A DNA stretch of 64,000 nt, taken from contig NC_083225.1 in assembly GCF_032191835.1 (NCBI RefSeq), positions 83,700,001 through 83,764,000 of the forward strand, read 5' to 3'. Every line of letters begins with the position of its first letter. Positions within the stretch are counted from its first letter, which is position 1. Positions 4,746 to 63,245 of this stretch are shown piece after piece. The notes beneath the pieces were generated by a model. It searched no databases. It saw only the letters and a program-made list of their open reading frames with translations, and was not told the origin of the DNA. Source of the stretch: Heteronotia binoei (lineage: Eukaryota). A program made the translations under genes and the position numbers.

Positions 4746-5025
4746 CAAGGCTTTTTTGTAGAAAAAGCCCTGAAGGAAGTCATTTGCATATTAGGCCACA
4801 CCCCCTGAAATCAGCATTGTTTCACACAGGGCTTTTTGTTGAAAAAGCCCAGAAGAAATTCATTTGCATACTAGGCAATACCCCCTGACATCACCATTGT
4901 TTCACACAGGGGTTTTTTTGTTGGAAAAGCCCAGCAGGAGCTCATTTGCATATTAGGCCACACCCCCTGATGCAAAGCCAGCCAGAACTGTGTTCCTGTG
5001 CCTTCCTGTTCAAGAAAAAGCCCTG
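4746..5025. mobile_element. hAT-type MITE with three ~83-bp internal repeats
   Basis: TIRs CAAGGCTTTTTTGT / AAGAAAAAGCCCTG. 8-bp TSD GGTCAACC at 4738-4745 and 5026-5033. Each unit contains ATTTGCAT. Confidence 0.9.
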
Positions 5026-5533
5026 GGTCAACCTATTTAAGACAATCTTTACTTCGTCCTCTCTCTTTTTGGCTTTCTGCAGCAGCAAGCTATGTGAGCC
5101 TTCTTGTGGCATGAATGCTGGCTGGTCCCTTTCTTTCAATGATATCAGCTTCTATGAACTTCAAATATTGTTATGTCAATCTAAAACTGACCAACAGGGA
5201 AAAGGTTCCAAAATTTCATTACACTTTCCCCCTGGGGTGCCCTGCCCAGTTCACTGTATGGCTGATTACCTGGCCATTAGGCCACATGTAGTAGGTTTAT
5301 TTCTCATAAATCCCAATGGGCTCCTTCCTGTCCAGAAATTCCAGTTCACTAGTGTTCTTCACAAGTGTATTACAGCCCTAGGCCTCTCTCCCTCTGAATT
5401 TGGCACCCACTCATTCCACATAGGTGCTGTCACTGTGGCTACTAGCATTGGGCTTCTACATGATAAGATCTGGACCATTGGACACCGGCATTCTGCTGCA
5501 TACCAGTCATACATATGCTTTCAGACCAACTGA
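4946..5533 (+). pseudogene. Tyrosine recombinase remnant of Ngaro (N-terminal part of the ORF call runs through a MITE)
   Basis: CPVHCMADYLAIRP, GTHSFHIGA and terminal Y match DIRS/Ngaro YR motifs (HSFRIGAA). Confidence 0.8.
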
Positions 5534-6740
5534 AATGTTTTATCTGTTATAATCTTAGTTTGCATAGGTTGTCTTAAATCAGCTTGGATCGTTGGACATA
5601 GTATTGTCTTCTGGGTCAGGGAATTCTCAATTTCTTTGTGAATCACTTGGGCTAAATGAACAGCTTCATATCACCTTTCTAGGGCACAGAGAAATGCATT
5701 GGGTTTCCCCTTGGATACTGTCTTAAACTATGGTCTACTAAACTTGATGCAATAATTATACATTTTGGGGGAAATTACTTACCTGCTCAAAAAAGCAATT
5801 GAGCTACACCAAGCAATAATGTTGGACTAAAGTTCCTCACTGCACATCTGCCACACACAAAGCTGTTTTGGTCAGAGCTGCTTGAATGTCATGATTGGTG
5901 TGGTGCCATCAACCTGGAGAAAGCAGATTTGTCCAGAAGAAAGCTCTGCAAGTGTGTAGGTAGGATCATCAAGTCTGGTTTTCCCCGTTAAAGTTGGGAA
6001 CGCAGACATTTCTTTTTTTATGTTTGGCTTTATTCAGGGCAGATGAGGTTCATCTTTTGGAATGGGGGGGTGCATGCTTGGGATGGCTTGCTTTATTGGT
6101 TGCAGGCTTAAGTGCTTTTGTAGGAGCAAAGGGGGTTCTCTTGTGGTTGTTTGGGCATTAGTACTGATCATTTTGGGGGGAGACAGGCCTGCATATCCAC
6201 CTTCCCTTAAGGGGTCTTGGGGGTTGAGCCAGAATGTAGCATGCCCAGCTCAGGGGCTGTCTGCAGTCTCACCACAAGGGAAGGTGGCAAGGGAAGTCAC
6301 ACAGCTGTACCTACCCATGTGGTCTCCACTATTTTGTCACTCCATGATTACTATCCCCTGCAAGTGAGCTCTGGGGGATGGTTTTCCCTGTGGCAAGTGG
6401 GTTGTCTAATGCTGGGATTCATACCCATGCTGAGCCAGTGCTCCTTGGACTGTAATCAGTAAAGCTGTAACCATTTCCTTCCACAAATTATTGTTGTGTA
6501 CTTACTCTGCATGTTCTTTCCATATTTGGCCATGGGCATCCAAACACTGAGTTGTACAGGATATCCAGTGGTCTAACAGTTGATCAGTGATCTGTATCTA
6601 ATTCCTTGAAGCACAGAGGAACATCTAGTGGAGTGGCTTCTATCTCAGCCTTGCTACCTGATCTCCTTTAGCAGACTGTGCCATGGATTATTTATTTACT
6701 TCATATTTTTTTCATTCTTCTTTTCTCCTTATTAGGGTTC

Positions 6741-7005
6741 TGTTATGTATTGAACATAAGCTGTGTACCGCATGGCGATAGCTGCTAAAGGCGACCTACG
6801 GGTCCCCGGATGTGGCTCACCAGATGCCCCGCCCATCAAGATCTACGGCAGGAAGTTTGACTGGCCAGGATTGGTCTGGTCAGTCGAGGGGGCTGTTCCG
6901 GGTAATATATATAAGCGGGACCCAGCCCGCATGCTCTCTCTCTTGTAATGTACCACCGAATAAAGCATGTTGCCTTCAACTCGTCTCGCGACTCAGTACA
7001 TTACA
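6741..7005 (+). mobile_element. Solo LTR (Gypsy-like)
   Basis: TGTTATG...ATTACA ends, TATATAA and AATAAA inside, 5-bp TSD GGTTC (6736-6740, 7006-7010). CpG-rich, so probably young. Confidence 0.85.
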
Positions 7006-7347
7006 GGTTCAATTATAAAACTATATTTTTAACAAATTTACAAAAAAATAAAAAAGACAAAAAAGTAAACAAGACATCCTGGGTTAATGTCTACCAGATT
7101 AATCTATCTAGCCAAACACTCTTTCATCAAAGGGTTTACATTCCTATCCATACTCAGGCCTTAAACACTAGCAGAAGAGAAAGAAAAACACTCAGCCTAG
7201 ATGTTTCAAACTGGCAGACATCTTCACTTAATTCCTCCTCCTGCTAACAAAGACTGGCCATGCACAGGCTACAAATGCTGGCAGTAGGAAAGAGGAAAAC
7301 ACTTAGCTTCTGAGAAATTCTGTGGGGCTCTAATGATCAGTTGCGGG

Positions 7348-7466
7348 TAGGGTTGCCATATCTAGCTGGGACCTCGTCGGGACAAAATTGGGTCTTGTCG
7401 GGATGTTGGGACAAGAAGGTCCATAATGGTGATGGTTCCAATATATCGGGATGGATGGCAACCCTA
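7348..7466. mobile_element. hAT (Tip100-like) MITE, copy 1
   Basis: Perfect 11-bp TIRs TAGGGTTGCCA / TGGCAACCCTA. No TSD on its own two flanks. Confidence 0.9.
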
Positions 7467-7689
7467 TGTTCACCAAGGAATTCCCAGTATGAATCATCTA
7501 ATGGGTCTTGTCCAAGATCAACTTTTCCCAGGCATCCCACCTTCTTTATTCCAACAGCATCTTCAATCTATTAAATCTACAGACTATTCACTAATGCCAG
7601 GCATGCTAAACACTGAAACAGGCAATATGTTTGTTAACTTATTTCTTTATGTACTTTATTTATAGTCTGCCTTTCATAAATGGCAGTTC

Positions 7690-7925
7690 TCTGCTTAGTA
7701 CATTACTTAGTACATTTTTATCCCACCCTTCTTCCAAGGAACTAAGCCTAACTTTATCCCTGCTTCTGTTTTATCCTCACAACAACCCTGTAATGTAGGC
7801 TGGACAGAGAGAAAGAGAGAGAGAGAAAGAGTGTGTGACTGGCCATTTAGCAAGCGTCTATGGGAGAGTGAAGACCTGAATCTGTGTCTCCCTAGTTTGA
7901 GACACTAACTGCTGCACCGCACCAA
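7690..7925 (-). mobile_element. Degenerate MIR/Squam3-like SINE
   Basis: TTTTATCCTCACAACAACCCTGTAATGTAGG core and a decayed tRNA head (CTAACTGCTGCACCGCACC). Confidence 0.65.
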
Positions 7926-9199
7926 CTCTATCATATCAAACACCATAAGGAGGATATTTTGCCTTTATTCCCCAAGGACAAAGAGTCAACACACAGGCCC
8001 CTTTCAAAGAAGTCTGTTGGAAATTGGAAGGATGATGATGATCAATGAGAACAGGCAGCTGCTGGGAGTTAGGGGAGCTACAATTTCCTAGAAGCCAGAG
8101 AAATTGAATCACTCATTCCAGTGACAAATGAAGGACTTGGGGAGACTTCAGCCTGACAAACCAAGCTTTGCTCAGCCCTGGAGAATATTCTGCTAAGAGT
8201 GCCATTTCTGAGACTTTCACCTTTGCAAACCTTTCCCTCTTCATCCTCTCATACCACAATTGTTGTGGATAAGATGGGCGTTTTGACTAAGAACCAAGAA
8301 CTGATAAGGATCAGGGCCACGACACTGGGATTGTGGGAGGAGGGGAGCTGTTTCCCCAACTGATTATTCCCACATACTGTTTCCCCTCACTGCTTTAATG
8401 GGGGAGGGAGAGACCATCACTTATGGTCTGAGGTTTCTTTACCATCTTTCCCCCAGGGTTGCTCTTCAGCACTAAAAAACACCCCAAGTTGGATAACTGA
8501 ACCACAGAATTCTGCAAGACACACATTTGCCCCGACTCTTCCAGTGACATCCAGGATAGAAGAAGCCTTGGAATCCAGGTCTTTGGAGGAAGGGCTGCAA
8601 TGCTCCAGATGCTTTTAATGTCTTAACATTCCTTCCTGTGCATCTTCATAAACAACGGCTTAAAATCTTTATGCCAGGGTATATAAATCAGACCAGACTA
8701 GGTGGCCTCATCACTTACCAGGGACAGAAAAGATGTTAGGCCAGCTGTACTTTGACGATCTCAATCTCTCTGGTCTGATTTCTTTTTTCTTTGGAGTATT
8801 CTGGAAATTCTTTCTTTCTTTCTTTGGTCTCTCCCACAATAGAAAAAATGAAAGGCCTGCCAATGCCTCCCAATTCTAATCCAGACTGCATTTGTCACCA
8901 TGATTTTTGCCTCTCCCCTTTTCTCTTCAACAGCTGACTCTAAGACTGGAAGCTCTTGGGGGCAGAGACCTGACTGTTTTGCTTATGTTATATCCAGTGA
9001 TTTGACCCTTGAGAGCATCTTAAACATCATTCGCTCTCTCCACAGGGCAAACTGAGGCCCCTCGGCTTCTGACACTGAAGTGTCTCTATAGCACTTCCTT
9101 GAAGCTGAGCCCTTATAGTGGGGCTGGCCAGATCAGGCTTTAAGCCCCTTTTGAAGTAACCTGGGTAACCTGGACCAACCAGCTACTCTCTCCTAACCT

Positions 9200-9943
9200 T
9201 ACCTGCTGAGAATAAAACGCGGGGGAGTGGGCTAATATACACCACCCTGAGCTTCTGAGAAGGAGGAATAAAAGGGTAACAGGAAAAAGATTTTCTATCC
9301 CTAGTCCGGACACAAATTCCGGGGGGGGGGGGGTGGAGAGGAGAAATGCCTTGCGGGCAGCACCCCCTCCTTCCCTCCCAAGGTGTCTTGTGGTTGTGGC
9401 ACTTCACAGAGTGATGGCGGCAGGCGCTTTGGTGGCCGCATCCCTGGGCAGCACCTTCTCTGGTCTGGGGCCCTCTCGGCAGCAACCACATCAGGAAGGC
9501 GACCATTCCCTCTCCCCTTTTTACAACTGGAAAACAGAGCCCAAGAGAGCCACTGCCAGCTGAGACTGGGTCCCAAGCCCGCACTCGCTCCCTCCCAACC
9601 AGCTTAGGACTTAGCAGCGCCGCCGCCGCTCTCTCTGCAGCACTGAGCCGCTCCTCCCCAGTTGCTCTGCTCCAGCCCGGACCAGCCGCCCAACCCGCGC
9701 CTCAGTCGAGCACAGCAGGTGCTTCCCCTGCTGGCCATGGAAGCAGCGCCTTCCCAGCCTGGCCTCGACCGAAACCGCCCTTTCCCGCCAGGAAGTTTCC
9801 AGGCAACGGCTTGTGGCCCCCTAAGCTTTCTTGTGCCCAGGACCCAGACCAGCCTCTTCTAAAAACCCACGGCACTGACCCTCCTCAGAGTGGAGCCCTC
9901 CAATGGGAAAAGCGCCTCACGCACACCCTCCCCGCAGGAACAC
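9200..9943. promoter_or_regulatory. GC/CpG-rich island, candidate promoter and first exon (probably minus-strand transcript)
   Basis: CpG-dense against an AT-rich background. E2F-like TTTCCCGCC (9781-9789), ETS GGAAGT (9791-9796), RFX X-box-like GTTTCCAGGCAAC (9795-9807), CCAAT at ~9900, (GCC)n tract. Strong minus-strand donor CAG|GTAAGG at ~9201. Confidence 0.55.
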
Positions 9944-10056
9944 GTTGCCATATCTAGCTGGGACCGTCGGGACAAAATTGGGTCTTGTCGGGATGTCGGG
10001 ACAAGAAGGTCCATAACGGTGACGGTCCCGATATATCTGGACGGATGGCAACCCTA
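9944..10056. mobile_element. hAT (Tip100-like) MITE, copy 2, left TIR truncated
   Basis: Direct repeat of 7352-7466. Right TIR TGGCAACCCTA is intact; the left end lacks TAGG. Confidence 0.9.
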
Positions 10057-12850
10057 GTTGTGGGTCTGCTCCTTTAACTGAAATGGCCTAAAAACCAACT
10101 TTTCATACTTTATCTCATGTGTAAACATTTTCTCTGGGCAGCTGCATTTGTCATCTTTGGGGGAGGGGGACGTTATTTCAAAACAGATAAACTTAAGTTG
10201 CCTTCAGCCAAGAAGAAAAAGGAGGCATAAATAATTGCATGTATGAATGAATGAATAAATGAATCAATTAAACTTTCCAATTGTGTAGTATATTATTTTT
10301 ATGAGAAGGAAACTGAACAGCAAACAATTCCAATCAGCAATTTTAACTATATTTTTAACTATGTACACTATGTACATTACTCTACATATAAATGTAGCAT
10401 GCAGATAATTCATTATTTTGGATTTTTTATGATATCTCCATTAGCACTAGAATCCTATTAAAATCTTCATATCCACAGAACAGGTGAAAAAGTCAGCATG
10501 GATATTGTATATGTTTACAAAAAAGTAGAGGGAAGCTGTCAAAGCCATTTGTTAGCTCATTGGCTTTCTCCACTGTCTAGGAAAGCACATGGTTTTAGCA
10601 GATGCCATGTCAAATTAAAGGAACAACTTTCAGTAATAAGCATATTACACTTGGCAAAAAAATTGTTTATTAATCAATATGTCAGTTTTACTGTGTATTT
10701 ATACTTTCAGACATAATGATAAACTGCAAACAATGGTAAATCCCCCCCCCAATAAATAAAAATGTTTTAGGTACTTGGACAGAACCAGTGCAATTAAAAA
10801 AAAATTAGCATCCTCTCTCTGCACCAATCAGTTCACAAGCTATTTTTGAAAATCACCTCTGTTTCAAATGTGGTTTATCATATGTGGCATTGACATATTA
10901 GACTTCTGTTCAAGAACCACGAGCCTGAGGTGCAATTAGATACATGTAAGTATTTGTGCAGTTTTTAAAATCCTGACCAGTACATTATTTTCTTTTGAGG
11001 AACATTTGAATTTGAATGCTTCCTTGGTCTCCACCTATGAACAATATTTCTCTATGGATGATTTTTCATTATATTCTCATAGAGGAAATTTATTTTATAG
11101 AGCAATCTAAATCACATTTACTACTCAGAAGTAAATCCCACTAGTTTCATGGGATTTGCTTCTAAATAAGTATATCACAATTACAGCCTTTGTCTGAATT
11201 TTTATATTTGTACTATATATATTATAATATATTACACATTATTTTTCATTTTAATTATTGTATTACTATTACATTCTTTCATTTTTTATTTTATTTTGTA
11301 TTGTTTTTTAACAAATGGCTATAAGCTGTGAGCAGCCTTGAGCCTACTTGAGGAGTAGGACGGGGTATAAATGGAATATAATTGATTAATTAATCATGTG
11401 CTACTACCTAGAAGGCACAAACAGAATATTTTAGGGTTTTTTTTTAAACTATACTACAGAATGCTGTCTACTATTCAAGTGTGTTGAGATTGACAGTTCA
11501 TTTGTAGTTGTTCTTCTACCTCACACACAGACACTATGTGTAGAAGGGAATCCCAGAGCTGAGAAATGCTAGATGCAAAATGGGAAATCCTTATTTGAAT
11601 AACATTATAGAACATACTCAAAAGCAATGTTCCAGAAATCAGGGGAGATGTTCAAATAAATGAAGGATGTCCCAGTTCAGATGCTATATTGTACATGCAA
11701 CTATAGGGAAAATGTACACAGTACTGAGATCTTTCCCTAAATTTACCACACACAGAAGTACAGGGGGAAAGTATCTTAGTACCTTCGCCCCAAAGTAGTT
11801 TATTTATCTGTAACCACTGATTTATCTGATGTATCAGTGAGATTTTTTTCAAATACATATGGAACTCCTGTGTACATATAGTACTTATAATATTTATAAT
11901 ATTGTTTTTGCATTTGCTTTTCTGATATTAACCTCTGCTTCTGCTGATGGTGGCAGAACTAGATATGAATGGATTACCTTCATTTTATTCTTTTATCATC
12001 CCATAGTCTCATTTTGCCCAGCATTGCAGTCTCCCTTAATTACAATTTGAAAAGAGCTTTGACTCTTGAAAGTTTATAATCTGAAAATCTTGTTGGTCTC
12101 TAAGCTAATGGACTCAAAACTAGTTCTTCTTAAATTACTTTGTCTAAGGAAATTTCTAACATTTATTCCAAGGTTGGAATATGACATTTTCTGCAGTTTT
12201 CAGTTCCCTCATTTCATGTTTATTTCATGTTAAGTCCATTTCGCACTGTGTTACTGATGTGCATTAATTAAACATTGCAAAAAAAAAAAGCATTTTTGAT
12301 GTAAGCATAGATTAATGTAATGTTTTATTGATACATAAAGTCTTGTGTTTATGGATACATAAAGTCAAAGTCTACACAAAATAATACTGATACAATCACA
12401 CATTCTATTGTATCAGTATTGCTTTTTCACAGAATACAAAGTGCTAATGTGCAATGGTAAACCATTGTACAGTATATTGGGTTAAAATCATAGACAATTG
12501 CATCAAGTTTGTACTGTTTTTTCTACTAACACATGCATTTTTTATTATTCTAATACTAATAAATTAATATAATAGATTATGTCTCCCTTCCTCCTTCTTA
12601 CCTCTGGAATGTGTAAATTAAAGGAAATGACATTCTTTATTGCAATAGTGGTAGGGCGACATCTCTCCTCCCCACCCCCCAGATTAGTAGCTTTCTTTTT
12701 CTCCCTTTTGTCTCCCTCTCAGCCCCATTTCAATTGCAGTTGGCAGCAAATCCTCTTGCTACATCATAGGAAAGTAAGAGGGCATTTAGAAATGGCACTT
12801 GAATATTTGGTCTTTGTGTTTTTTTGTTGTGGTGGTTCTTGGCATATGTG

Positions 12851-13020: not shown

Positions 13021-13175
13021 NNNNNNNNNNNNNNNNNNNNNNNNNNNNNNNNNNNNNNNNNNNNNNNNNNNNNNNNNNNNNNNNNNNNNNNNNNNNNNNN
13101 NNNNNNNNNNNNNNNNNNNNNNNNNNNNNNNNNNNNNNNNNNNNNNNNNNNNNNNNNNNNNNNNNNNNNNNNNNN
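13021..13175. other. Assembly gap (N run)
   Basis: 155 N. Confidence 1.
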
Positions 13176-14369: not shown

Positions 14370-15390
14370 GAAGGCATGAAGGTTGAGAGTGGCCCAAACA
14401 GAGAGAGGCTAAATCCGGCGAAGACAGAGGTCCTTTGCTTGGGCCGTCGGGGTCCGGGAAGGGAAATACCCCTTCCGGTTTTTGACGGTGCGCTGCTGAA
14501 GGCAGCGCATAGAGTCAGGAGCCTGGGGGTACTTCTGGAGCCTTCCTTAACAATGGAGGCCCAGATAGCAGCCACTGCCAAGTCCGCATTTTTCTATCTT
14601 AGGCGGGCAAGGCAGCTGGCTCCCTTCCTGGAGCGCGACGATCTAGCAACGGTGATCCATGCTACGGTCACCTCGAGGTTGGACTACTGCAATGCCCTCT
14701 ACATGGGGCTGCCCTTGTGCCGAACCCAGAAATTGCAGCTGGTGCAGAACGCCGCCGCCCGGTTGTTATTAGGGCTCCCAAGGTGGGAGCACATTCAGCC
14801 GGGACTTCAGGCTCTGCACTGGCTGCCAATATCTTACCGAGTTCGATACAAGGTGCTGGTCATTACCTTTAAAGCCCTATATGGCCTAGGACCTGCCTAC
14901 CTGTGGGACCGTCTCTTCCCACACGTTCCCCAGCGAGCACTAAGATCAGGAACCCAAAACCTCCTGGTTGTCCCCGGGCCAAAGGAAGCCCGCTTGAAAG
15001 TTACAAGAGACCGGGCCTTCTCCGTAATGGCTCCATCTTGGTGGAACCAGCTGCCGGAAGAGGTAAGGGTCCTGCGGGATCTTACTCGATTCCGCAGGGC
15101 CTGTAAGACATCCCTCTTCCGGCTGGCCCACAATTAATCAGCACTGAGTACTGAATATCGAAGACTGAACATCAAATACTGAACTTGTAACCGATGAGTG
15201 TAGCTGTAGGACCGCCATCTGAGTTTAATGTATATGTATATAACAATTGTTTAGATTTTTAACTGTAAATTATGATATGTTAATTTTAATGTTTAATTTT
15301 AGATTCCATGTTAGTTTTATATGTTGTAAGCTGCCCTGAGCCACCTAGTGGGAAGGGCGGGATATAAATCTTAGATAAATAAATAAAACA
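14370..15390 (+). mobile_element. L2-clade LINE, 5'-truncated
   Basis: ORF 14376-15137 (LNPAKTE, LDYCNALY.GLP, LHWLP..YRVRYK) is the L2 RT C-terminus, followed by a 3'UTR and (TAAA)n tail. Confidence 0.92.
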
Positions 15391-21916: not shown

Positions 21917-24685
21917 ATGGTCAGAAACTCCATTGCCTCTAAACTCGAAAACCTGCCAACAGGTCACTCAGATCGCATCACGTCTATGCATCTCCCACTT
22001 CAAAACAAGCAGCATGCAACACTCTTTAGTGTGTATGCTCCAACCCTTCAAGCAGATCCTGCAGAAAAGAACAAGTTCTATGCTGATCTACGCAACCTCG
22101 TACGGAAGACCCCTACAGAGGACAAGGTGATCATCCTTGGCGACTTTAATGTGAGAGTAGGTAAAGACTCGGAAGCCTGGAAAGGAGTACTTGGCAAACA
22201 TGGCATTGGCAACTGCAATGATAACGGGCACCTTCTGCTAGAATTCTGCAGGGAGCATCAGCTCACCATTACCAACACTATCTTCCAGCAGAAGAACAGT
22301 CAAGACAACCTGGATGCACCCACGGTCCAAGCATTGGCACCTTATCGACTACATTCTGGTGCGCCAGAGAGACCTTCGAGATGTCTTACACACCCGAGTA
22401 ATGCCCAGTGCAGAATGTCATACAGATCATTGTCTAGTACGCTGCAATCTCCGTCTTCACTTCAAATCTACACCCAGGAGAGGCGGTATCCCCCGGAGGA
22501 AGTTTCAGGTTGGCAGCCTGAAGTTAAAGCTGCCTTCCAGGCAAAACTCCAGACAAGAATTGAGGACCGCAGTTGCCTCACAGATCCTTCTCTAGAAGCA
22601 CTCTGGGAACTCCTAAAAACTACCATCCTGTTGACCTCTGAAGAAATCCTCAGGTTCTCCACAAGGAAGAACAAGGACTGGTTTGACGAGAACAATCAAG
22701 AGATCCAAGAATTACTGGCGAAAAAGAGATCTGCCTACCAAGCACATCTTGCTCAGCCCTCCTGTCCCGGGAAAAAAGCAACCTTTTGTGCTGTATGTAG
22801 CAACCTCCAGCGCAAGCTTCGAGACATTCAGAACGAGTGGTGGACCAAGCTTGCAGAGAGAACCCAGCTGTGTGCAGACACTGGTGATGTAAGAGGGTTC
22901 TACGAAGCCCTGAAGGCAGTATATGGTCCATCATATCAGGTTCAGAGTCCCTTGTGTAGTGCAGACGGCCAAGTGCTCCTCACAGACAAGGCATCCATAC
23001 TGAACCAGTGGTCAGAGTATTTTCAGGTCCTCTTCAGTGCCAATTGCGTAGTTCAAGATTCAGCAATCCACCTCACCCCACTTCAACCAGTAAAAACAGA
23101 GTTGGATGTGATCCCCACCCTAGAAGAGACTGTTAAAGCCATCAAGCAACTGAAAAGTGGCAAGGCAGCGGGAGTTGATGGAATTCCACCAGAGATCTGG
23201 AAGCATGGAGGCATAGTACTACATAGTACACTTCACAAAGTACTTGTCACCTGCTGGGAACAAGGCAAACTACCACGGGACTTTCGCGATGCAATCATCA
23301 TTACCCTACATAAGAACAAAGGGGAAAAGTCAGACTGTTCCAACTACCGGGGGATAACCCTGCTCTCCATCGCAGGCAAAATCCTTGCCAGAATACTCCT
23401 AAACAGACTGGTGCCCACCATTGCAGAAGAACTCCTCCCAGAGAGCCAGTGTGGCTTCAAAGCTAACAGGAGCACCACCGACATGGTATTTGTTCTCAGG
23501 TAGCTCAAAGAGAAATGCAGGGAACAGAACAAGGGTCTATATGTGACTTTTGTCGACCTTACCAAAGCTTTTGATACCGTTAGCAGGAACGGCCTGTGGC
23601 ATATCTTGAAACGTTTAGGATGTCCCCCAAGATTTCTCAGCATGATCATCCAGCTACATGAAGACCAGCGAGGCCAAGTCAGACACTGTAACGACCTCTC
23701 GGAGCCCTTCCCAATAGGCACAGGTGTAAAGCAAGGCTGTGTTCTCGCGCCAACTCTCTTTACGATCTTTTTTAGCATGATGCTTCAAAGAGCTGCAGCA
23801 GATTTAGATGATGATGGTGTCTACATCTGCTATCGCACCTATGGCAGCCTGTTCAACCTGAGGCGACTAAAGGCCCACTCCAAGACAATGGAAAAACTCA
23901 TCTGACAGCTACTGTTTGCTGATGATGCTGCACTTGTCTCCCACTCGATATCAGCTCTGCAGCATATGACGTCCTGCTTTGCAGAGGCTGCCAAGCTATT
24001 CGGCCTAGACGTTAGTCTGAAGAAGACAGAAGTTCTCCACCAGCCTGCACCCCAGGAAGATTATCACCCTCCTTGTATTACTGTGGGCGAATCAGTTTTG
24101 AAGACAGTCCAGCAGTTCAGCTACCTGGGGTGCATCATCTCCTCAGACGCCAAGATCGACAAGGAGATTGACAATAGGCTGGCAAAGGCAAACCGTGCAT
24201 TTGGCCAACTGCATAAAAGAGTGTGGAGCAACAAGCATCTGAAAAAAGGCACAAAGATCAATGTTTACAAAGCGGTTGTGATGACAACCCTCATCTACGG
24301 CTCCGAATCGTGGGTTTTATACCGTCATCACCTGCGACTCCTTGAGCGCTTTCATCAGCGCTGCCTTCGCACCATCCTCAACATCCACTGGAGTGACTTT
24401 GTGACCAACACTGAAGTCCTCAAGTGGGCGGAGGTTACAAGCATCGAGGCATTGCTGTTGAAGACGCAGCTGCGCTGGGCAGGGCATATCTCCAGGATGG
24501 AAAACCACCGCCTTCCCAAGAGTGCCCTGTATGGCGAACTTTCCACCGACCATCGAAATAGAGGAGCACCAAAGAAGAGGTACAAGGACTCCTTGAAGAA
24601 ATCCCTTGGTACCTGTTGCATTAACCATCAACAGTGGTCTGACCTAGCCTCAGATCGCAAAGCATGGAGGCATACCATCCACTAG
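21917..24685 (+). pseudogene. RTE EN-RT polyprotein, disrupted by frameshifts and stops
   Basis: ORFs 21917-23503, 22314-22595, 23543-23905 and 23966-24685 tile one RTE protein. The N-terminal endonuclease motifs appear deleted. Confidence 0.92.
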
Positions 24686-27031: not shown

Positions 27032-28408
27032 TTAGATCTCGTGTACTACTCTGGTGATTAATGGAATGGGAGGAAACAAGTATACGTGTTGTTGGGTCCA
27101 AGGGAACAGCAAGCCGTCCCCTGCAGTGGATCCACTCCTCCCCTGCAGCAAAATCTCTTGCACTTCGTGTTGCTGCGTGTGGCAAACACATCCACCTCTG
27201 GTGTCCCCGACTTCTGGAAAATGGGTTGGAGAAATTCCCAGTTGAGTTCCCACTCGTGGAGTGTGGCTCCCCCACGACTGAAAAAGTCTGCACAAGCATT
27301 CTGGTTGCCTGGAAGATGAGTCGCTGCTAACGTCGTGCTTGTTTCCCTGCAAATATCCCATATGTGCAGAGCTAACAGGCATAGCTTCCTTGATACTGTG
27401 CCCCCTTGCCTGTTTATGTAGGCCAACGCGGTGGTATTGTCCATCAGGATCACCACCGTCTTGTTTGCAATCAATGGCAGAAAGGAAAGAATGGCATGAT
27501 GAATCGCCAATAACTCCAGAAAGTTTATGTGATATTGTAGGTGACATTTGGGCCACCTGTCTCCCATGCAAATGCCGTTCACGTGAGCTCCCCTCCAGGG
27601 ATGCATCTGAAGTTATAGATATTGTAGTGGTTTGTCTGTGGAATGGCGCTCCTTCTAGGAGGTGCCGTTTCTGTTGCCACCACCCAAGGGTAGATAAGAC
27701 CGACTGTGGAATGACCATCTTGCGCGATGGAGGGTCCACCTGGCATCGGAAGTGTCTGAGGAACCACAACTGTATTATTCTCATGTGGAATCTGACAAAT
27801 ACTAGAACTGATGTGGTTGAAGCCATTAGACCTAGAAGGCATTGAATTTGCAGTGCTGTAACTGCTGAATTGTGGAGAAAGATCTGCACAAGGGATATAA
27901 TGTCGTCTGCCCTCTTTGTTGGTAAGAATGCTTTGCAGGCCTGCGTGTCCAGGATTGCTCCTATAAATTGCACCCTCTGGGAAGGCTGAAGGCAGGATTT
28001 CTTCTTGTTGACCTGTAATCCCAACTCCCGTAGGAGGGCCAGATTGGTATCGATGTGTTGCACTAGACGAGATTCTAATTCGGCTACCAGAAGCCAGTCA
28101 TCTATGTATGGGAATACTGTGATCCCCTGTAGTCTTAGATGGGCTGCAACGACCATCATTGTCTTTGTAAAGACCCGAGGAGCCGTGGAGAGGCCGAAGG
28201 GTAGAGCTCGGTATTGATAATGAGCCTTCCCAATGGTGAATCTGAGAAACTTTCTGTGTGCTGTGTGTATGCTGATATGAAAGTAAGTGTCCTGCAGGTC
28301 TAGAGTGGCCATCCAATCCCCTTGATTGAGAAGAGGAAGGATGTTGGGTAAGGAGGTCATTCTGAATTTGTGGTGTGAAATGAAGAGATTTAGGGCTCGA
28401 AGGTCCAT
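27032..28408 (-). pseudogene. DIRS1 RT / RNase H / Dam-like methyltransferase region, frameshifted
   Basis: LDLQDTYFHI, YRALPFGLSTAPRVFTK, YIDDWL, SDAS and HINFLEL. Methylase motifs DVFATRSN.KC and YLFPP. Confidence 0.92.
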
Positions 28409-42020: not shown

Positions 42021-42168
42021 NNNNNNNNNNNNNNNNNNNNNNNNNNNNNNNNNNNNNNNNNNNNNNNNNNNNNNNNNNNNNNNNNNNNNNNNNNNNNNNN
42101 NNNNNNNNNNNNNNNNNNNNNNNNNNNNNNNNNNNNNNNNNNNNNNNNNNNNNNNNNNNNNNNNNNNN
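42021..42168. other. Assembly gap (N run)
   Basis: 148 N. Confidence 1.
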
Positions 42169-42424: not shown

Positions 42425-43491
42425 GTCAGTATCAACCGCTGCTTCTTTGAAAAAATGAAAGAGAAAATTTGGGACAAGGACTGTCAATCAGATTCTGAGA
42501 TTACAAAATCTGTGTTTCATGAAGTATATCTTTTTATGACCTGTTTTAAATTATTACTATATTTCCTTTTATTGTATTCAATGCTTAACCATACAGTTAA
42601 ATATAAATGTGATATATTTCATTCTTTCATAGATACTGGAATTTACAAGGGCTATGAATATTTCAGTTTTGTAACCTACCCTGTTGCTCATTCTTGCATC
42701 ATATTTAGGGCTTTGAAATTAGAAAAGATTGTTCCCCTTCTCCCAGATGGTAATTAATTCTGCAGCGGGAAATATGCCAGTTCAGAGCTGCTAAACTGTC
42801 AATGTTGAGATTAGGAAAAATAGATAGCCAAGCATAGAAAACAACAAAAACGATGCTTTAATAAAACCAAATTGAATTTAAAGTATAAAATTCACAGGAA
42901 GACTGAATACTAAATGGAAAAAATGTCCTGATGTTGACTTAAATCCCTGCTTCCCCAGAAATTTACCCAGAATATGGACTAATTTCTGGGGGGGGGGGGA
43001 GACTGATCACTCAGAAGGATAACTAGAGCTGAATCCAGATACAGTTTTCTGCTAAGAGAAGCCATTTCCAAGAGCCAATGAGAACTTTACTGCCATCCCA
43101 CTGAAACCTTGAGATACTCCTCATTTGGGGACAAGATCCCCCAAAGATCTTTGTTATTGTAAAGGAATAATCAAGAAAGGGCTTCATCATCCATTTGTAA
43201 GATGCTTGTCATAGGACTTCAATCATCTATTTATAAGGTGATTGTCATAGATATGAGCTGTGGTGGCCTTTGGGATGAAGAGACAAGGTGACTGTGTACT
43301 GGAAGCATCTCCTATTTGTCCAGATACTCTGTTGGGAGGGGAATATTGATCTTTATACACATATCTGTTGCTCAAGTAGGGATTTCTAAGATTGACCACA
43401 ATGTGAACCTCAAGCCCGAAGTGATGTATTGAACTTTCTTGAACAATGATCACAGCTCAGATCCTCAGAGTATGTGAATTCTGTGCTAGAC

Positions 43492-43985
43492 TAGGGATGG
43501 GTACAAATCAAAACATGAATCGTGATTCGTGCCTAAAATAGTTGATTCATGGATTGTTCTGAATTGGTTTGAGTACTCGTGCTATGCATGACTTGCAAAA
43601 TGGCTTGGGTTTTGGGTGGTTCATCTGGTTGTTATCAGCAGGGGATCCTCCTCATGTGCCATGATGTGCCTTGTGTGATAACATCTCCCGGAAGTGACAT
43701 TATTGCACCGGGCACATTGCTGGGGGGGATGCTCTATCATATGATATAGTGTCCCCCAGCTATGTGCCCGGCACAATAACATCATTTCTGGTAGACATCA
43801 TCATGCTGGCCACATTGTGGCATGCCAGCACTTCCTAGCACTCCCGAAACAAATGAACCAACAAACTATGAATTGTTCAGGAAATTTTTAAAAACCCACA
43901 AAACAAACTGAACCACTGAATTTGGCAAACCAAAGAACCACAAAACGAAATGAACCACCATTTTTGTGTTCCATGCCCATCCCTA
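43492..43985. mobile_element. hAT-type MITE with TAGGGATGGG TIRs
   Basis: TAGGGATGGG / CCCATCCCTA. Flanks TGCTAGAC / ATCTAGAC are a decayed 8-bp TSD. Related ends at ~36626 and ~38124. Confidence 0.8.
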
Positions 43986-44754
43986 ATCTAGACTGCTCTG
44001 TGTCAAGAAAAGACAATTCTCCACCCATGTACACAGAGAGTAATTACTTATTAGCAGTACGGCCCTCAGAAAGTTACACTCTTCAAAACCCATTTACTTC
44101 AGTGGATTTAGGATCACAATAACAGTATCTGATATGCACAATTTGAAATTTGGTTATTTCTGGGTTCTCTGACCTTGGCAAACAGTTCTATGAACAAATG
44201 CTAGCAGCATGTATTCATTTGTTTGTTTTTAAAATGCATTGACCACTTTGTAAACATATGGTAGAGAAAACAAATCAGAGGGCCAAATATACAAAAAGAG
44301 AAAAAAGGTGTAGTACTTGGTATTATTGTATAATCAGCTCACTTGATCTTGTTCTTCAGTTTGTCATAAAATTTATAGATCAAAGTGGGATGAAAAATTA
44401 TGTTGTAGGGAAAGAAGAGGGAGCTCAGAATCAGAATGCTTTTTTTAAAAGGCTTATATAGACTCCTCTCATTTTCTTGCAGTGTATTTATAACTGTTTC
44501 ATGTTTTCAGTGACATTTTACATACTCTTTCTTATTGCTTGGATTTGTGCATGGTTATTCCCCTTAGTTCCTTGCAATAGGCAGCATTAGAAATGGAAAT
44601 AAATGCATATAGTAATGTCTTCATCATAAATGTTTTATGGAAAAAGAAAAGCCTTGCTAGTAAAATCACATGAATGTGTGGGTTTATACAAACCATAATC
44701 ATCAAACTGAAAAAGAATCCTGGTACAAACTCTTGCTCTCTGTGGTCTTGGCAG

Positions 44755-45754: not shown

Positions 45755-48650
45755 TAGGAGGCTAAAGTTGGTTCCTTATTCGCAGATCCTTATTCATTCC
45801 TTATTCTTGAATTCAAACAAAAACACTGAAGGAAGGAAGGGGGTACAGGAGGGGTAGGAGTTTCTTAAAAGTGAAATATTGAAAGCGCAATCACAGACGA
45901 TTCCTATGAGGAGAAAAAATGGAAAAAGCCTAAAGAAGTCTAAGTGGCTCCATAAACAGCTCTTTAAAGACTTGAGAAATAAAAAAGACTCCTTTAGGAA
46001 TTGGAAGGAGGGCCTTATAACCAAGGATGAATCTAAACAAATCACAAGTGCTTGTAGAGAAAAGTTAGGAAAGCTAAAGCTCAGTATGAGCTTAGGCTGG
46101 CCAAAGATGCTAAAAACAACAAAAAAGAGTTCTTTTTTTATGATCAGAGTAAGAAAAAGAGCAAGGACAAGGTAGGCCCATTGCAAGGGCAGGAATGTGA
46201 AATTGTAACAGGTAATGAAGAGAGGGCAGAATTACTCAATTCCTACTTTTCCTCAGTATTCTCTTCTGAGGGAAATGGTGCTCACCATGGCAAAAACAGA
46301 ACATATAAGGAGGGTATGAAGTTCCAACCTAGGATCAGCATAGGGATAGTACATAAACACCTAGTTTCTTTAAATGAATCTAAGTCCTCAGGGCCAGATG
46401 AATTGCATCCAAAGGTTCTAAAAGAGCTTGCAGATGTAATTTCTGAGCCTCTAGCTATTGTTTTTGAGAATTATTGGAGAACAGGAGAGGTGCCGGAAGA
46501 TTGGAAGTGGGCGAATGTTGTCCCCATCTTCAAGAAGGGGAAAAAAGATGATCTGGGTAACTACCGACCTGTCAGCTTGACATCTATACCTGGAAATGTT
46601 TAAGAACAAATCATCAAACAGTCGGTCCTGGAACATTTAGAAAGAATTGAGTGATTACTAAGAGCCAGCATGGTTTTCTCAAGAACAAGTCATGTCAGAC
46701 TAACCCGATCTCTTTTTTTTGAGAAAGTGACTACCTTGCTGGATCAGGGGAATGCTGTAGACGTGGTTTATCTTGATTTCAGTAAGGCTTTTGATAAGGT
46801 TCCACATACTATCCTTGTTGACAAGTTGGTAAAATGTGGTTTAGATCCTGTTACCATTAGGTGGATCTGTAACTGGTTGACAGATCACACCCGAAGACTG
46901 CTTGTGAATCCTCTTGGAGAGGAGTGACAAGTGGAGTGCCTCAAGGATCTGTTCTGGGACCTGTTTTGTTCAACATCTTTATCAATGATTTGGATGAAAA
47001 ATAGAGGGAATGCTTATTGAATTTGCCTATGATACTAAATTGGAAGGGGTTGCAAATACAGAAGAAGACAGAAACAGGATACAGGATGACCTTGACAGGC
47101 TGGAAAACTGGGCTAAAATTAATAAAATGACTTTTAACAGGGATAAATGTAAAGTTCTACATTTAGGTAGGAAAAATCCAATGCATGGTTATAGGATGGG
47201 GGAGACTTGTCTTAGCAGTAGTATGTGCGAAAAGGATCTAGGGGTCTTAGTGGATCATACGCTGAACATGAGTCAACAGTGTGATGCAGTGGCTAAAAAG
47301 GCAAATGCAGTTTTGGGCTGTATCAACAGAAGTATAGTGTCCAGATCACGTGATGTGATGGTATCGCTTTACTCTGCTCTGGTAAGACCTCACCTGGAGA
47401 ATTGTCTTCAGTTTTGGGAACCACATTTTAAGAAGGATATAGACAAGCTGGAATGGGTCCAGAAGAGGGAGATGAGGGTGGTGAGGGGTCTGGAGACCAA
47501 GTCCTATGAGGAAAGGTTGAAGGAGCTGGGGATGTTTAGCCTGGAGAGGAGGCGGCTAAGAGGTGATATGATCACCCTCTTCAAGTATTTGGAGGGCTGT
47601 CATCTAGAGGATGGTGTGGAATTGTTTTCTGTGGCCCTGGAGGGTAGGACCAGAAGCAATGGGTTGAAATTAAATCAAAAGAGTTTCCGGTTCAACGTTA
47701 GAAAGAACGTCCTGACAGTTAGAGCGATTCCTCAGTGGAACAGGCTTCCTTGGGAGGTGGTGGGCTCTCCTTCCTTGGAGGTTTTTATACAGAGGCTAGA
47801 TGGCCATATGACAGCAATGAAGATCCTGTGATTTTGGGGGGAGGTGTTTGTGAGTTTCCTGCATTGTGCAGGGGGTTGGACTAAATGACCCTAGAAGTCC
47901 CTTCCAGCTCTATGATTCTATGAAATGGGCCAGAAAGCTAGCAAGCTCTGTTAGGTGGTTTTCAAGATCTCCATATTTGCACTTGGAAAAAATTATGGAC
48001 TATACTTATACTTTTGGCACAAGCACTTTATGATACTAAAAATCTTCAAATCCATCATTGTATTGAAATTTGATAAACTTTATTGAATTTTCTATGAAGA
48101 TCTCCCAGAATTACATTTTATCTTCTGTTTCCCTAGAGACCAGTTTCCCTAGAGAAAGTGACTGCTTTGCAGGGTGAACTTCCCTTGCCCAGTTCTCTGG
48201 ATCCCATGGGAGAAATACAAAGAAAGAACCTTTAAGACCAACAAGTGTTAATGTTGTAAGGATATTTTAAGGTTTGTTTTTTAAAAAAATAATAATAATA
48301 ATTGTGTTTGTATATGTCCTTTATAAAGTTTATATCTCTGCTATGTAATCTTAAATAGGTACATACATGGCCCAGCTCGACAAGGTTTCATTTATGTCAG
48401 ATCCAGCCCTCATAAAATGTATCTGACACTCCTGCCCTAGCAGAATAATTATTCTCAGTTGAATGCTCCATGTTACAACTGGTTAATTCCTCCAGATTAT
48501 TATAAAATCAACTAATACAGATCAAGGTGTTTTCTTGTTGGTTCCTTATTCATGAATGCAAACAAAAAAACTGAAGAGAGTTTGAAAGCTCTGAACCCCA
48601 AAATAAGGTCTGGACCCCCATTCACGAATAAGGAACCAACTTCAGCCTCT
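45755..48650. mobile_element. ~150-bp MITE split by a 2.7-kb insertion
   Basis: TIRs GAGGCT(A/G)AAGTTGGTTCCTTATTCG match at 24/25. ATTGATTTT flanks both ends (8-9 bp TSD). Confidence 0.7.
45832..47922 (+). mobile_element. CR1 LINE, 5'-truncated ORF2 with (ATTCTATG)n tail
   Basis: [64 protein letters not shown] and WNRLPWEVV. Frameshifted. Confidence 0.95.
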
Positions 48651-49339
48651 ATTGATTTTGCAGAAACAAGGTTCGGCCCCTTCCCAGCCGAGCCTGCTCG
48701 CAGGCCATAGGCTGGGGGCCGTCTTTGCTCCTCCGGAAGGAAGGAGGGGCAGAAGGATCACCCGACATACGGGTGTTTTAGCTGGGCGCGGAGGCGGGGC
48801 TATTTAAGCCCCGGCTCCCGCCTCAGCACGCAGTTCGTTTTGGCTCTCTGGTTGGAGAGCCACGTGCGGCATCGTGGAGCGGAAGACGAGGCCTGAGTCG
48901 TCAGGGCCTGTACCTTGGCCAGCGAGGTCGGAGCGCGAGCGGCGGCTACAGCGCTGGCTGGGTGAAACGCGGAGCGCGAGCGGCGGCTGCAGAGCTGGCT
49001 GGATGAGACGCGTGCGGCTGCTGGGACGCTTGAGGCGGCGGTTTGCGCAAGTGGGAGTCGGGCGGCCCTTTCGTTGGGTAAAGGGGCGGCCCGGGGGGGT
49101 TGCTGGCGGCTGGTGACGGCGGCGGCATTCTATAGGTTGGGAGGCCACAGAAGGCAAGCGCTAGCGGCGGCCATTTCGTCGGCGCTGGGGCCCTTTGCTC
49201 ATTCAGGGGCTAATTTAGTGAGCATTAGCTGTGGGAGACGAGCGCTGGCCTCCTGTTTCTTCGCCCCTCGGTACCGGGCTTAGAGCGCAGCGGCCCTTCT
49301 AAGGGGCGGTGCGCACGCGGCGGCCGTTTTAGGGCATCC

Positions 49340-63159: not shown

Positions 63160-63245
63160 TGTTATGGAAATTCACAGGGCAATGTTGGGCAAATCACACT
63201 CAGTCTCACCTACCTCACAGGGTTGTTGTGAGGATAAAGGCGGGG
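63160..63245 (+). mobile_element. MIR-core SINE fragment
   Basis: TTGGGCAAATCAC...CCTACCTCACAGGGTTGTTGTGAGGATAAA. Confidence 0.65.

What the first reader, a model, noticed from the sequence alone, without database searches (positions are those of the whole stretch)
7340..10064. Composite-transposon-like unit: two direct hAT MITEs bracket a promoter-containing 2.5-kb segment and share one outer TSD
Seen: MITE copy 1 (7348-7466) and copy 2 (9944-10056) are direct repeats. Neither has a TSD on its own flanks. However, the 8 bp left of copy 1 (GTTGCGGG, 7340-7347) match the 8 bp right of copy 2 (GTTGTGGG, 10057-10064) at 7/8, and the mismatch is a CpG transition. The inner left TIR of copy 2 is truncated. 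Known: hAT transposases make 8-bp TSDs. Inference: the whole 2.7 kb may have inserted as one unit, either by composite or alternative transposition using the outer TIRs, or by integration of a MITE-bearing circle into a resident MITE. It would carry ordinary genomic DNA with old SINE/L2 relics and a CpG-island promoter, which would make it a promoter-mobilising, Tn-like or Pack-type event in a vertebrate.
Basis: partly seen in the sequence, partly recalled or inferred. Interest (0 to 1): 0.75.

Follow-up and report, generated by a model that had tools for sequence, protein, structure and literature searches.

The report
Two-MITE composite hAT insertion in gecko
Two copies of a tiny cut-and-paste transposon and the 2.5 kb of unrelated, partly CpG-rich DNA between them sit inside a single 8-bp target duplication, so the 2.7 kb most likely entered this gecko site as one block, as composite Ac/Ds elements do in maize; no other genome could be consulted to prove it.

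Summary
Copy 1 (7348-7466, 119 bp, perfect 12-bp TIR TAGGGTTGCCAT) and copy 2 (9944-10056, lacking the first 4 bp) are direct repeats. Neither has its own TSD. The outer 8-mers GTTGCGGG and GTTGTGGG match 7/8, and the mismatch is a CpG transition.

- **Chance:** about 6e-4 in this window. In a blind scan of 3,798 TIR pairs this was the only one with a perfect TIR and a 7/8 TSD.
- **Right edge:** GC falls from 0.65 to 0.32 exactly at copy 2, the second sharpest step in the 64 kb. This suggests the inner DNA and the right flank were not originally neighbours.

I put about 0.8 on everything between the 8-mers having entered one target site.

- **Favoured mechanism (0.45):** transposition from the two outer ends, as a maize-type macrotransposon or composite insertion. 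The broken inner TIR of copy 2 would force that pairing.
- **Main rival (0.3):** a single resident MITE later rebuilt by break repair. Copy 2 begins with GTTGC, the same 5-mer that opens the TSD, and earlier notes report several repair captures in this genome.
- **Unproven:** promoter function.

An unchecked note, s1-340747, describes a similar unit elsewhere in this genome.

The parts
7340..7347 (.). Left copy of the outer 8-bp target-site duplication, GTTGCGGG
   Evidence: Matches 10057-10064 at 7/8; chance about 6e-4.
7348..7466 (+). MITE copy 1, complete: 119 bp, hAT-type ends (TAGGG fits YARNG). It has three direct GTYGGGAY subterminal motifs and folds as a hairpin.
   Evidence: DNA fold -20.2 kcal/mol, z -3.6.
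7348..7359 (+). Outer left TIR, TAGGGTTGCCAT, intact
   Evidence: 12/12 complementary to 10045-10056.
7455..7466 (+). Inner right TIR of copy 1, intact. It is followed by TGTTCACC, which does not match the left flank.
7467..9943 (.). Carried or inserted segment X, 2,477 bp. It is unique within the window. The left 1.8 kb is CpG-depleted (GC 0.44, o/e 0.12) and GC rises gradually from about 9000.
   Evidence: ORFs have no Pfam match.
7770..7809 (.). Short SINE-core-like relic inside X
   Evidence: 40-bp, 85% match to 63199-63238 on the opposite strand.
9300..9943 (.). GC- and CpG-rich right end of X: GC 0.64, 30 CpG, C-rich on the + strand. It is cut off abruptly at copy 2. It holds TTTCCCGCC (9781-9789), CAGGAAGT (9789-9796) and CCAAT (9900-9904), which look like E2F, ETS and NF-Y sites.
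   Evidence: The motifs were read and are named from general knowledge; they were not tested.
9944..10056 (+). MITE copy 2, 113 bp. Its left TIR lacks the first 4 bp (a 'fractured' end). It keeps 8 CpG against 4 in copy 1.
10045..10056 (+). Outer right TIR, ATGGCAACCCTA, intact
10057..10064 (.). Right copy of the outer 8-bp target-site duplication, GTTGTGGG

Best explanation
The stretch 7348-10056 is one composite hAT insertion.

At a donor locus, two MITEs of one family lay about 2.5 kb apart in direct orientation. The right-hand MITE had landed in a CpG-rich region and had lost the tip of its left TIR. A hAT transposase paired the only usable combination for that element's right end: the left end of the complete copy with the right end of the fractured copy. 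It then moved the 2.7 kb into a GTTGCGGG target and duplicated those 8 bp. The move was either plain macrotransposition or a re-replication 'composite insertion'.

Later change was almost entirely CpG decay. It is heavy in copy 1 and in one TSD copy, and light in copy 2, which lies in the CpG-rich zone.

Shown: the anatomy and its statistics. Inferred: the donor, the transposase step, and any promoter activity of the carried DNA. The broader claim, that everything between the two 8-mers entered a single target site by some route, I hold at about 0.8.
For: 1. One TSD of hAT length flanks the pair, matching 7/8 with a CpG-transition mismatch. Chance is about 6e-4, and it is the best TIR-plus-TSD unit among 3,798 TIR pairs in the window.
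2. Neither copy has its own TSD, although the copies differ at 0 of about 95 non-CpG sites. Decay of own TSDs is therefore not a credible cause.
3. The outer TIRs are intact and 12/12 complementary. The only damaged TIR is an inner one, which transposition from the outer ends does not need.
4. TAGGG fits the hAT terminal motif YARNG, and 8 bp is the hAT TSD length (PMC3014272).
5. GC drops from 0.65 to 0.32 exactly at copy 2, within the top 0.3% of positions. The only sharper step lies at the edge of another noted insertion near 48.6 kb. On its left side the CpG-rich zone fades gradually, so it looks cut.
6. The layout 'complete element, intervening DNA, fractured element, 8-bp TSD' is exactly that of maize Ac/fAc composite insertions and macrotransposons (PMC4270019 section 8; PMC9910405; PMC3260210).
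Against:
- Copy 2 starts with GTTGC, the 5-mer that also opens the TSD. That fits a microhomology or slippage origin of copy 2 at a resident single MITE and is unexplained by macrotransposition. It is a post hoc coincidence of about 1e-3.
- Earlier notes on this genome (s1-323869, s1-322569, s1-325733; not checked by me) report repair-type captures in hAT MITEs, which raises the prior of the repair rival.
- The left boundary, A against X, shows no composition break.
- No natural case in a vertebrate is known to me, and none turned up in the held literature.
Confidence: 0.45

Rival explanations
1. Two-step repair at a resident single MITE.

One MITE inserted at GTTGCGGG. Later a break at or in it, probably a transposase cut at its right end, was mended in a way that both duplicated positions 5-119 of the element and copied in 2.5 kb of ectopic DNA. 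The duplication could have come from slippage between the GTTGC at element position 5 and the GTTGC of the right TSD, or from copying the sister chromatid. X would then be filler DNA. The unit never moved as a whole.
For: - It explains the outer TSD and the foreign look of X equally well.
- It gives a reason for copy 2 to start exactly at GTTGC, and for copy 1 to end exactly at its terminal base, which is a transposase cut site.
- Earlier notes report three repair-type captures of 1 kb or more in hAT MITEs of this genome.
- Both copies are identical at all non-CpG sites, as expected if one was copied from the other.
Against: - Gap repair normally leaves one element with filler between partial ends. 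It does not normally leave two almost complete copies. Two complementary full copies on the two broken ends should anneal and restore a single MITE.
- It needs two or three rare events at one nucleotide position.
- The GTTGC match is post hoc.
Confidence: 0.3
2. Two independent MITE insertions into native, collinear DNA. Their own TSDs were lost through small flanking deletions, and the outer 8-mers match by chance.
For: - Two hits near one CpG-rich patch are therefore plausible.
- The scan reads very many windows, so rare coincidences will surface.
- The left boundary shows no composition break.
Against: - It needs three coincidences together: copy 1 without a TSD, copy 2 without a TSD, and outer flanks matching at about 6e-4.
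- The copies are too little diverged at non-CpG sites for TSD decay.
- A native CpG-rich zone would have to end within a few bases of the insertion point.
Confidence: 0.12
3. Homologous integration. A circle or ectopic template carrying MITE-X-MITE, or X plus one MITE, recombined with a resident MITE at this site.
For: It gives the same outer TSD and two direct copies.
Against: - Only about 115 bp of homology is available.
- It predicts two complete copies, and the missing 4 bp of the inner TIR need a further event.
- No circle junction or donor is visible in the window.
Confidence: 0.05
4. Assembly artefact: a false path through two copies of a 119-bp repeat.
Against: - The two copies differ at 7 sites and an indel, and one has a locus-specific truncated end.
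- A false path would have to leave and re-enter the same locus and still give matching 8-mers.
Confidence: 0.05

Closest known systems
Maize Ac/Ds macrotransposons (Huang and Dooner 2008, as cited in PMC3260210 and PMC9910405; Wang et al. 2022, cited there)
   Same: Same superfamily (hAT). Two linked elements in direct orientation supply the outer ends, the intervening host DNA moves with them, and one 8-bp TSD or footprint marks the site.
   Different: - Here the ends are 119-bp MITEs rather than Ac/Ds of 0.4-4.6 kb.
- The host is a vertebrate.
- The event is inferred from one fixed copy. It was not observed genetically, and no excision or donor is documented.
Ac/fAc composite insertions from reversed-ends transposition with re-replication (Zhang et al. 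2014, PMC4270019)
   Same: The layout is identical: a complete element at one end, a terminally fractured element at the other, donor-flank DNA between them, and an 8-bp TSD.
   Different: - That route predicts X to be two donor flanks joined at an internal junction, which I could not test.
- The maize examples are 19-23 kb or larger.
Abortive gap repair and filler-DNA capture in cut-and-paste elements (captured intergenic DNA in Ds, PMC3260210; scan notes s1-323869, s1-322569, s1-325733)
   Same: Foreign host DNA, often from gene 5' ends, lies between sequences of a hAT MITE within one TSD.
   Different: Those products carry one element's worth of ends. Here both flanking copies are essentially complete.
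Bacterial composite transposons (Tn5/Tn10 type) and plant Pack-MULE / Pack-TYPE elements
   Same: Unrelated DNA is bracketed by two transposon ends or copies and mobilised by the outer ends.
   Different: - These are different transposase superfamilies and different TSD lengths.
- Pack elements are defined by captured gene fragments and multiple copies. Neither is shown here.

Membership tests
hAT-superfamily non-autonomous element (MITE) | Terminal motif YARNG and short terminal inverted repeats | tested here: met
   TAGGG at both outer ends; 12-bp perfect TIR. Criterion from PMC3014272.
hAT-superfamily non-autonomous element (MITE) | 8-bp target-site duplication | tested here: inconclusive
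   Met (7/8) only for the pair as a whole; absent around each copy. No other family member was available to show the family's usual TSD.
hAT-superfamily non-autonomous element (MITE) | Small, non-coding, hairpin-forming, multi-copy | tested here: met
   113-119 bp, no ORF of note, fold z -3.6, two copies in the window. Genome-wide copy number is not testable.
hAT-superfamily non-autonomous element (MITE) | Ends shared with an autonomous element that encodes a hAT transposase | not testable with these tools
   No vertebrate genome collection was open. There is no transposase ORF with these ends in the window.
Macrotransposon / composite insertion (Ac/Ds type) | Two same-family elements in direct orientation with intact outward-facing ends | tested here: met
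Macrotransposon / composite insertion (Ac/Ds type) | One family-length TSD around the whole unit and none around the members | tested here: met
   7/8 outer match, 2/8 for copy 1's own flanks.
Macrotransposon / composite insertion (Ac/Ds type) | Intervening DNA foreign to the insertion site | tested here: inconclusive
   Sharp GC and CpG break at the right edge (top 0.3%), none at the left edge. No orthologue available.
Macrotransposon / composite insertion (Ac/Ds type) | Donor locus, excision footprint, or empty orthologous site | not testable with these tools
Pack-type (gene-fragment-carrying) transposon | Captured host gene fragment identifiable by homology | tested here: not met
   ORFs of X have no Pfam match. 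There was no protein word match for the junction ORF. Non-coding 5' sequence cannot be excluded.
Pack-type (gene-fragment-carrying) transposon | Several mobilised copies of the same chimeric unit | not testable with these tools
   No second copy of X in the 64 kb. The genome was not searchable.
CpG-island promoter | GC above 0.5-0.55 and CpG o/e above 0.6 over more than 200 bp | tested here: inconclusive
   9600-9799 has GC 0.675 and o/e 0.71. 9800-9999 has 0.595 and 0.58. 9300-9943 overall has 0.64 and 0.48.
CpG-island promoter | A transcription start, or germline hypomethylation | not testable with these tools
   The only hint is indirect. Copy 2 kept 8 of 9 inferred CpGs against 4 of 9 in copy 1; Fisher p = 0.13.

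The most novel reading that the evidence does not exclude
Pairs of hAT MITEs in this gecko act as working macrotransposons that repeatedly pick up and move pieces of CpG-island promoters. The unchecked note s1-340747 describes a second unit with a perfect 8-bp TSD, two MITEs and a CpG-rich segment. That would be a vertebrate counterpart of maize Ac macrotransposons that shuffles regulatory DNA.
Probability: 0.15. Interest if true: 0.8.

Novelty: new member of a known kind. Interest (0 to 1): 0.5.

Why it matters
Movement of host DNA between two linked hAT elements is well documented by genetics in maize. All 14 papers in the held library that use the term 'macrotransposon' concern plants or merely cite that work.

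A fixed natural example in a vertebrate, built from MITEs and carrying part of a CpG-rich and possibly regulatory region, would show that abundant small transposons can relocate kilobase pieces of regulatory DNA in animals. It would also give a simple search rule for more cases: a direct MITE pair, one outer TSD, and no inner TSDs.

The copies differ at no non-CpG site, so the event is probably young. Related geckos or the other haplotype may still carry the empty site or the donor, which makes the question directly testable.

Tried and rejected
- **Exact look-up of ten ATG-started window ORFs** around the unit: none is in the protein collection.
- **Word search** with the ORF that reads through TSD, copy 1 and X: no candidate. 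The protein route to orthologous or paralogous loci is therefore blank, and says nothing either way.
- **Metagenome scan, 21-mer of the MITE:** 0 hits.
- **Metagenome scan, 19-mer of the TIR:** 4 loci (L001-L004). All are the same bacterial gene, matching only the 19-mer, so they are chance hits and not the MITE.
- **Rfam at gathering scores:** nothing in the window.
- **Self-BLAST of 6000-11500 and of X against the window:** no paralogue of X, and no repeat spanning A|X, X|B or A|B that could serve as an internal empty-site test.
- **Pfam on ten nearby ORFs, including those of the CpG-rich part:** no family.
- **Readings considered and dropped:**
  - LTR or TRIM-type terminal direct repeats. 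The ends are TAGGG...CCCTA rather than TG...CA, and the TSD is 8 bp.
  - Tandem duplication of MITE plus X. X occurs only once.
  - A target-specific MITE hitting two copies of one repeat. The flanks share nothing beyond the 8-mer.
  - Copy 2 as an ordinary insertion with a 12-bp slippage deletion. This leaves the identical 8-mer left of copy 1 unexplained.
- One literature search was badly framed and gave nothing useful. Huang and Dooner 2008 and Wang et al. 2022 are not held and are cited only through papers that cite them.


Full report
**What is there**

- Copy 1 (7348-7466) is a complete 119-bp element. It has perfect 12-bp terminal inverted repeats, TAGGGTTGCCAT...ATGGCAACCCTA.
- It also has three direct GTYGGGAY subterminal motifs and a hairpin fold (-20.2 kcal/mol, z = -3.6).
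- Copy 2 (9944-10056) lies in the same orientation. It starts at element position 5, with ACAC where TAGG should be, and has a 2-bp indel.
- The copies are 92% identical. All seven substitutions fall in CpG sites and none in roughly 95 non-CpG sites. Copy 2 keeps 8 CpG and copy 1 keeps 4.
- These are the only two members of the family in the 64 kb.
- TAGGG fits the hAT terminal motif YARNG, and 8 bp is the hAT TSD length (PMC3014272).

**Is the shared TSD more than chance?**

- The flanks of copy 1 (GTTGCGGG and TGTTCACC) match at 2/8. Copy 2 has nothing on its left that matches its right flank.
- The outer flanks, GTTGCGGG (7340-7347) and GTTGTGGG (10057-10064), match at 7/8, and the mismatch is CG against TG.
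- Measured on this window, a match of 7/8 or better has probability 5.8e-4 for random pairs, 6.1e-4 for pairs at this spacing, and 2.7e-4 for this particular 8-mer.
- A blind scan took every pair of inverted 12-mers (6 exact bases, at most 2 mismatches) lying 50-3500 bp apart. It found 3,798 pairs, of which two have flanks matching at 7/8. This is the only one of the two with a perfect TIR.
- The independent-insertion reading needs this coincidence and, on top of it, the loss of both elements' own TSDs. Yet the elements show no non-CpG change. I give that reading about 0.12.

**Is the inner DNA foreign to the site?**

- X (7467-9943) has no other copy in the window. No repeat spans any of the three possible old junctions, so an internal empty-site test is not possible.
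- Composition does help. GC and CpG rise gradually from about 9000 to a peak at 9600-9799 (GC 0.675, CpG o/e 0.71). They then fall to GC 0.32, with 1 CpG in 644 bp, exactly at copy 2.
- With 400-bp arms this step (0.65 to 0.32) is in the top 0.3% of positions. It is exceeded only by a step at about 48.6 kb, at the edge of another insertion noted by the scan (s1-335923).
- A MITE dropping into a native CpG-rich zone would split it rather than end it. This supports a junction of unrelated DNA at X|B.
- The left boundary shows no such contrast (0.385 against 0.39), so it is uninformative.

**Mechanism**

The layout is: a complete element, intervening DNA, an element with a fractured inner end, intact outward-facing ends, and one 8-bp TSD. 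This is the published layout of two maize structures in the same superfamily:

- Ac/Ds macrotransposons (PMC9910405; PMC3260210);
- Ac/fAc composite insertions (PMC4270019).

A 2.7-kb unit is no larger than an ordinary autonomous hAT element. Copy 2's left TIR is broken, so its right end can be used only together with copy 1's left end. I therefore favour transposition from the outer ends, at 0.45.

The main rival, at 0.3, is a single resident MITE at GTTGCGGG that was later rebuilt by break repair. Two things keep it alive.

- **The GTTGC repeat.** Copy 2 begins with GTTGC, the 5-mer that also opens the TSD. In a single insertion that 5-mer would stand at element positions 5-9 and again 115 bp further on. 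Slippage between the two would give exactly 'full copy plus copy from position 5'. A transposase cut at the inner right end would then be the place where 2.5 kb of filler entered. This is a post hoc coincidence of about 1e-3 that macrotransposition leaves unexplained.
- **Earlier notes.** Follow-up notes on this genome describe three repair-type captures of host DNA in hAT MITEs (s1-323869, s1-322569, s1-325733). I did not check them.

Against the rival: gap repair normally yields one element's worth of ends around the filler, not two nearly complete copies, and the route needs several rare events at one nucleotide.

Homologous integration of a circle (0.05) and an assembly artefact (0.05) are less likely, for the reasons given under the rival explanations.

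**The promoter claim**

- The right 650 bp of X is a modest CpG island. It is C-rich on the + strand (GC skew -0.24).
- It carries E2F-like, ETS-like and CCAAT motifs at 9781-9904. I read these and name them from general knowledge.
- Copy 2's better CpG retention hints at germline hypomethylation at this site, but it is not significant (Fisher p = 0.13).
- No ORF there matches a protein family, and no expression data could be reached.
- The island looks truncated, so at most part of a promoter was carried.
- 'Promoter-mobilising' and 'Pack-type' are therefore open. A young transposon fragment of another kind is not excluded as the source of the CpG-rich DNA.

I did not resend it, so no reads could be laid.
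Two short MITE patterns went to the metagenome collection. The four loci returned are a bacterial gene and are irrelevant.
- Protein look-ups were blank, which says nothing about presence or absence in gecko genomes.
- The species name, Heteronotia binoei, comes only from another agent's note (s1-322593).

**Verdict**

The unit almost certainly marks one target site (about 0.8). One-step composite transposition is the best mechanism, but it is not separated from repair at a resident MITE. The mechanism is known from plants, so in a vertebrate this would be a new member of a known kind. A similar unit was noted elsewhere in this genome (s1-340747, unchecked), so a genome-wide census is the obvious next move.

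Noticed in passing
window 6736-7010: Solo LTR, 6741-7005: 265 bp, TG...CA ends, TATATATAAG box and an AATAAA signal, with a perfect 5-bp TSD GGTTC on both sides. It is CpG-rich (11 CpG in 6800-6999), so probably young. It lies 335 bp left of the composite unit.
   Followed up: partly
window 43484-43993: A second hAT-like element of another family, 494 bp. Its TIRs are TAGGGATGGGTA / TAGGGATGGGCA and its flanks are TGCTAGAC / ATCTAGAC (6/8, last six bases identical). This shows 8-bp-TSD insertions elsewhere in the window.
   Followed up: partly
window 9944-9948 with 7340-7344 and 10057-10061: The truncated copy 2 begins with GTTGC, the same 5-mer that begins both TSD copies. This may be microhomology left by a slippage or repair step. 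It remains unexplained.
   Followed up: partly
window about 48560-48670: The sharpest GC step in the window (0.32 to 0.68 between 400-bp arms).
   Followed up: no
window 4946-5533 and 14376-15137, 21917-24685, 27032-28408: Long ORFs that look like tyrosine-recombinase and LINE or DIRS reverse-transcriptase remnants. The two tested (4946-5530, 14376-15134) gave no Pfam match at E <= 0.01. The surroundings are transposon-rich, and no host exon was recognised.
   Followed up: partly
window 13021-13175 and 42021-42168: Two runs of N, 155 and 148 bases long.
   Followed up: no
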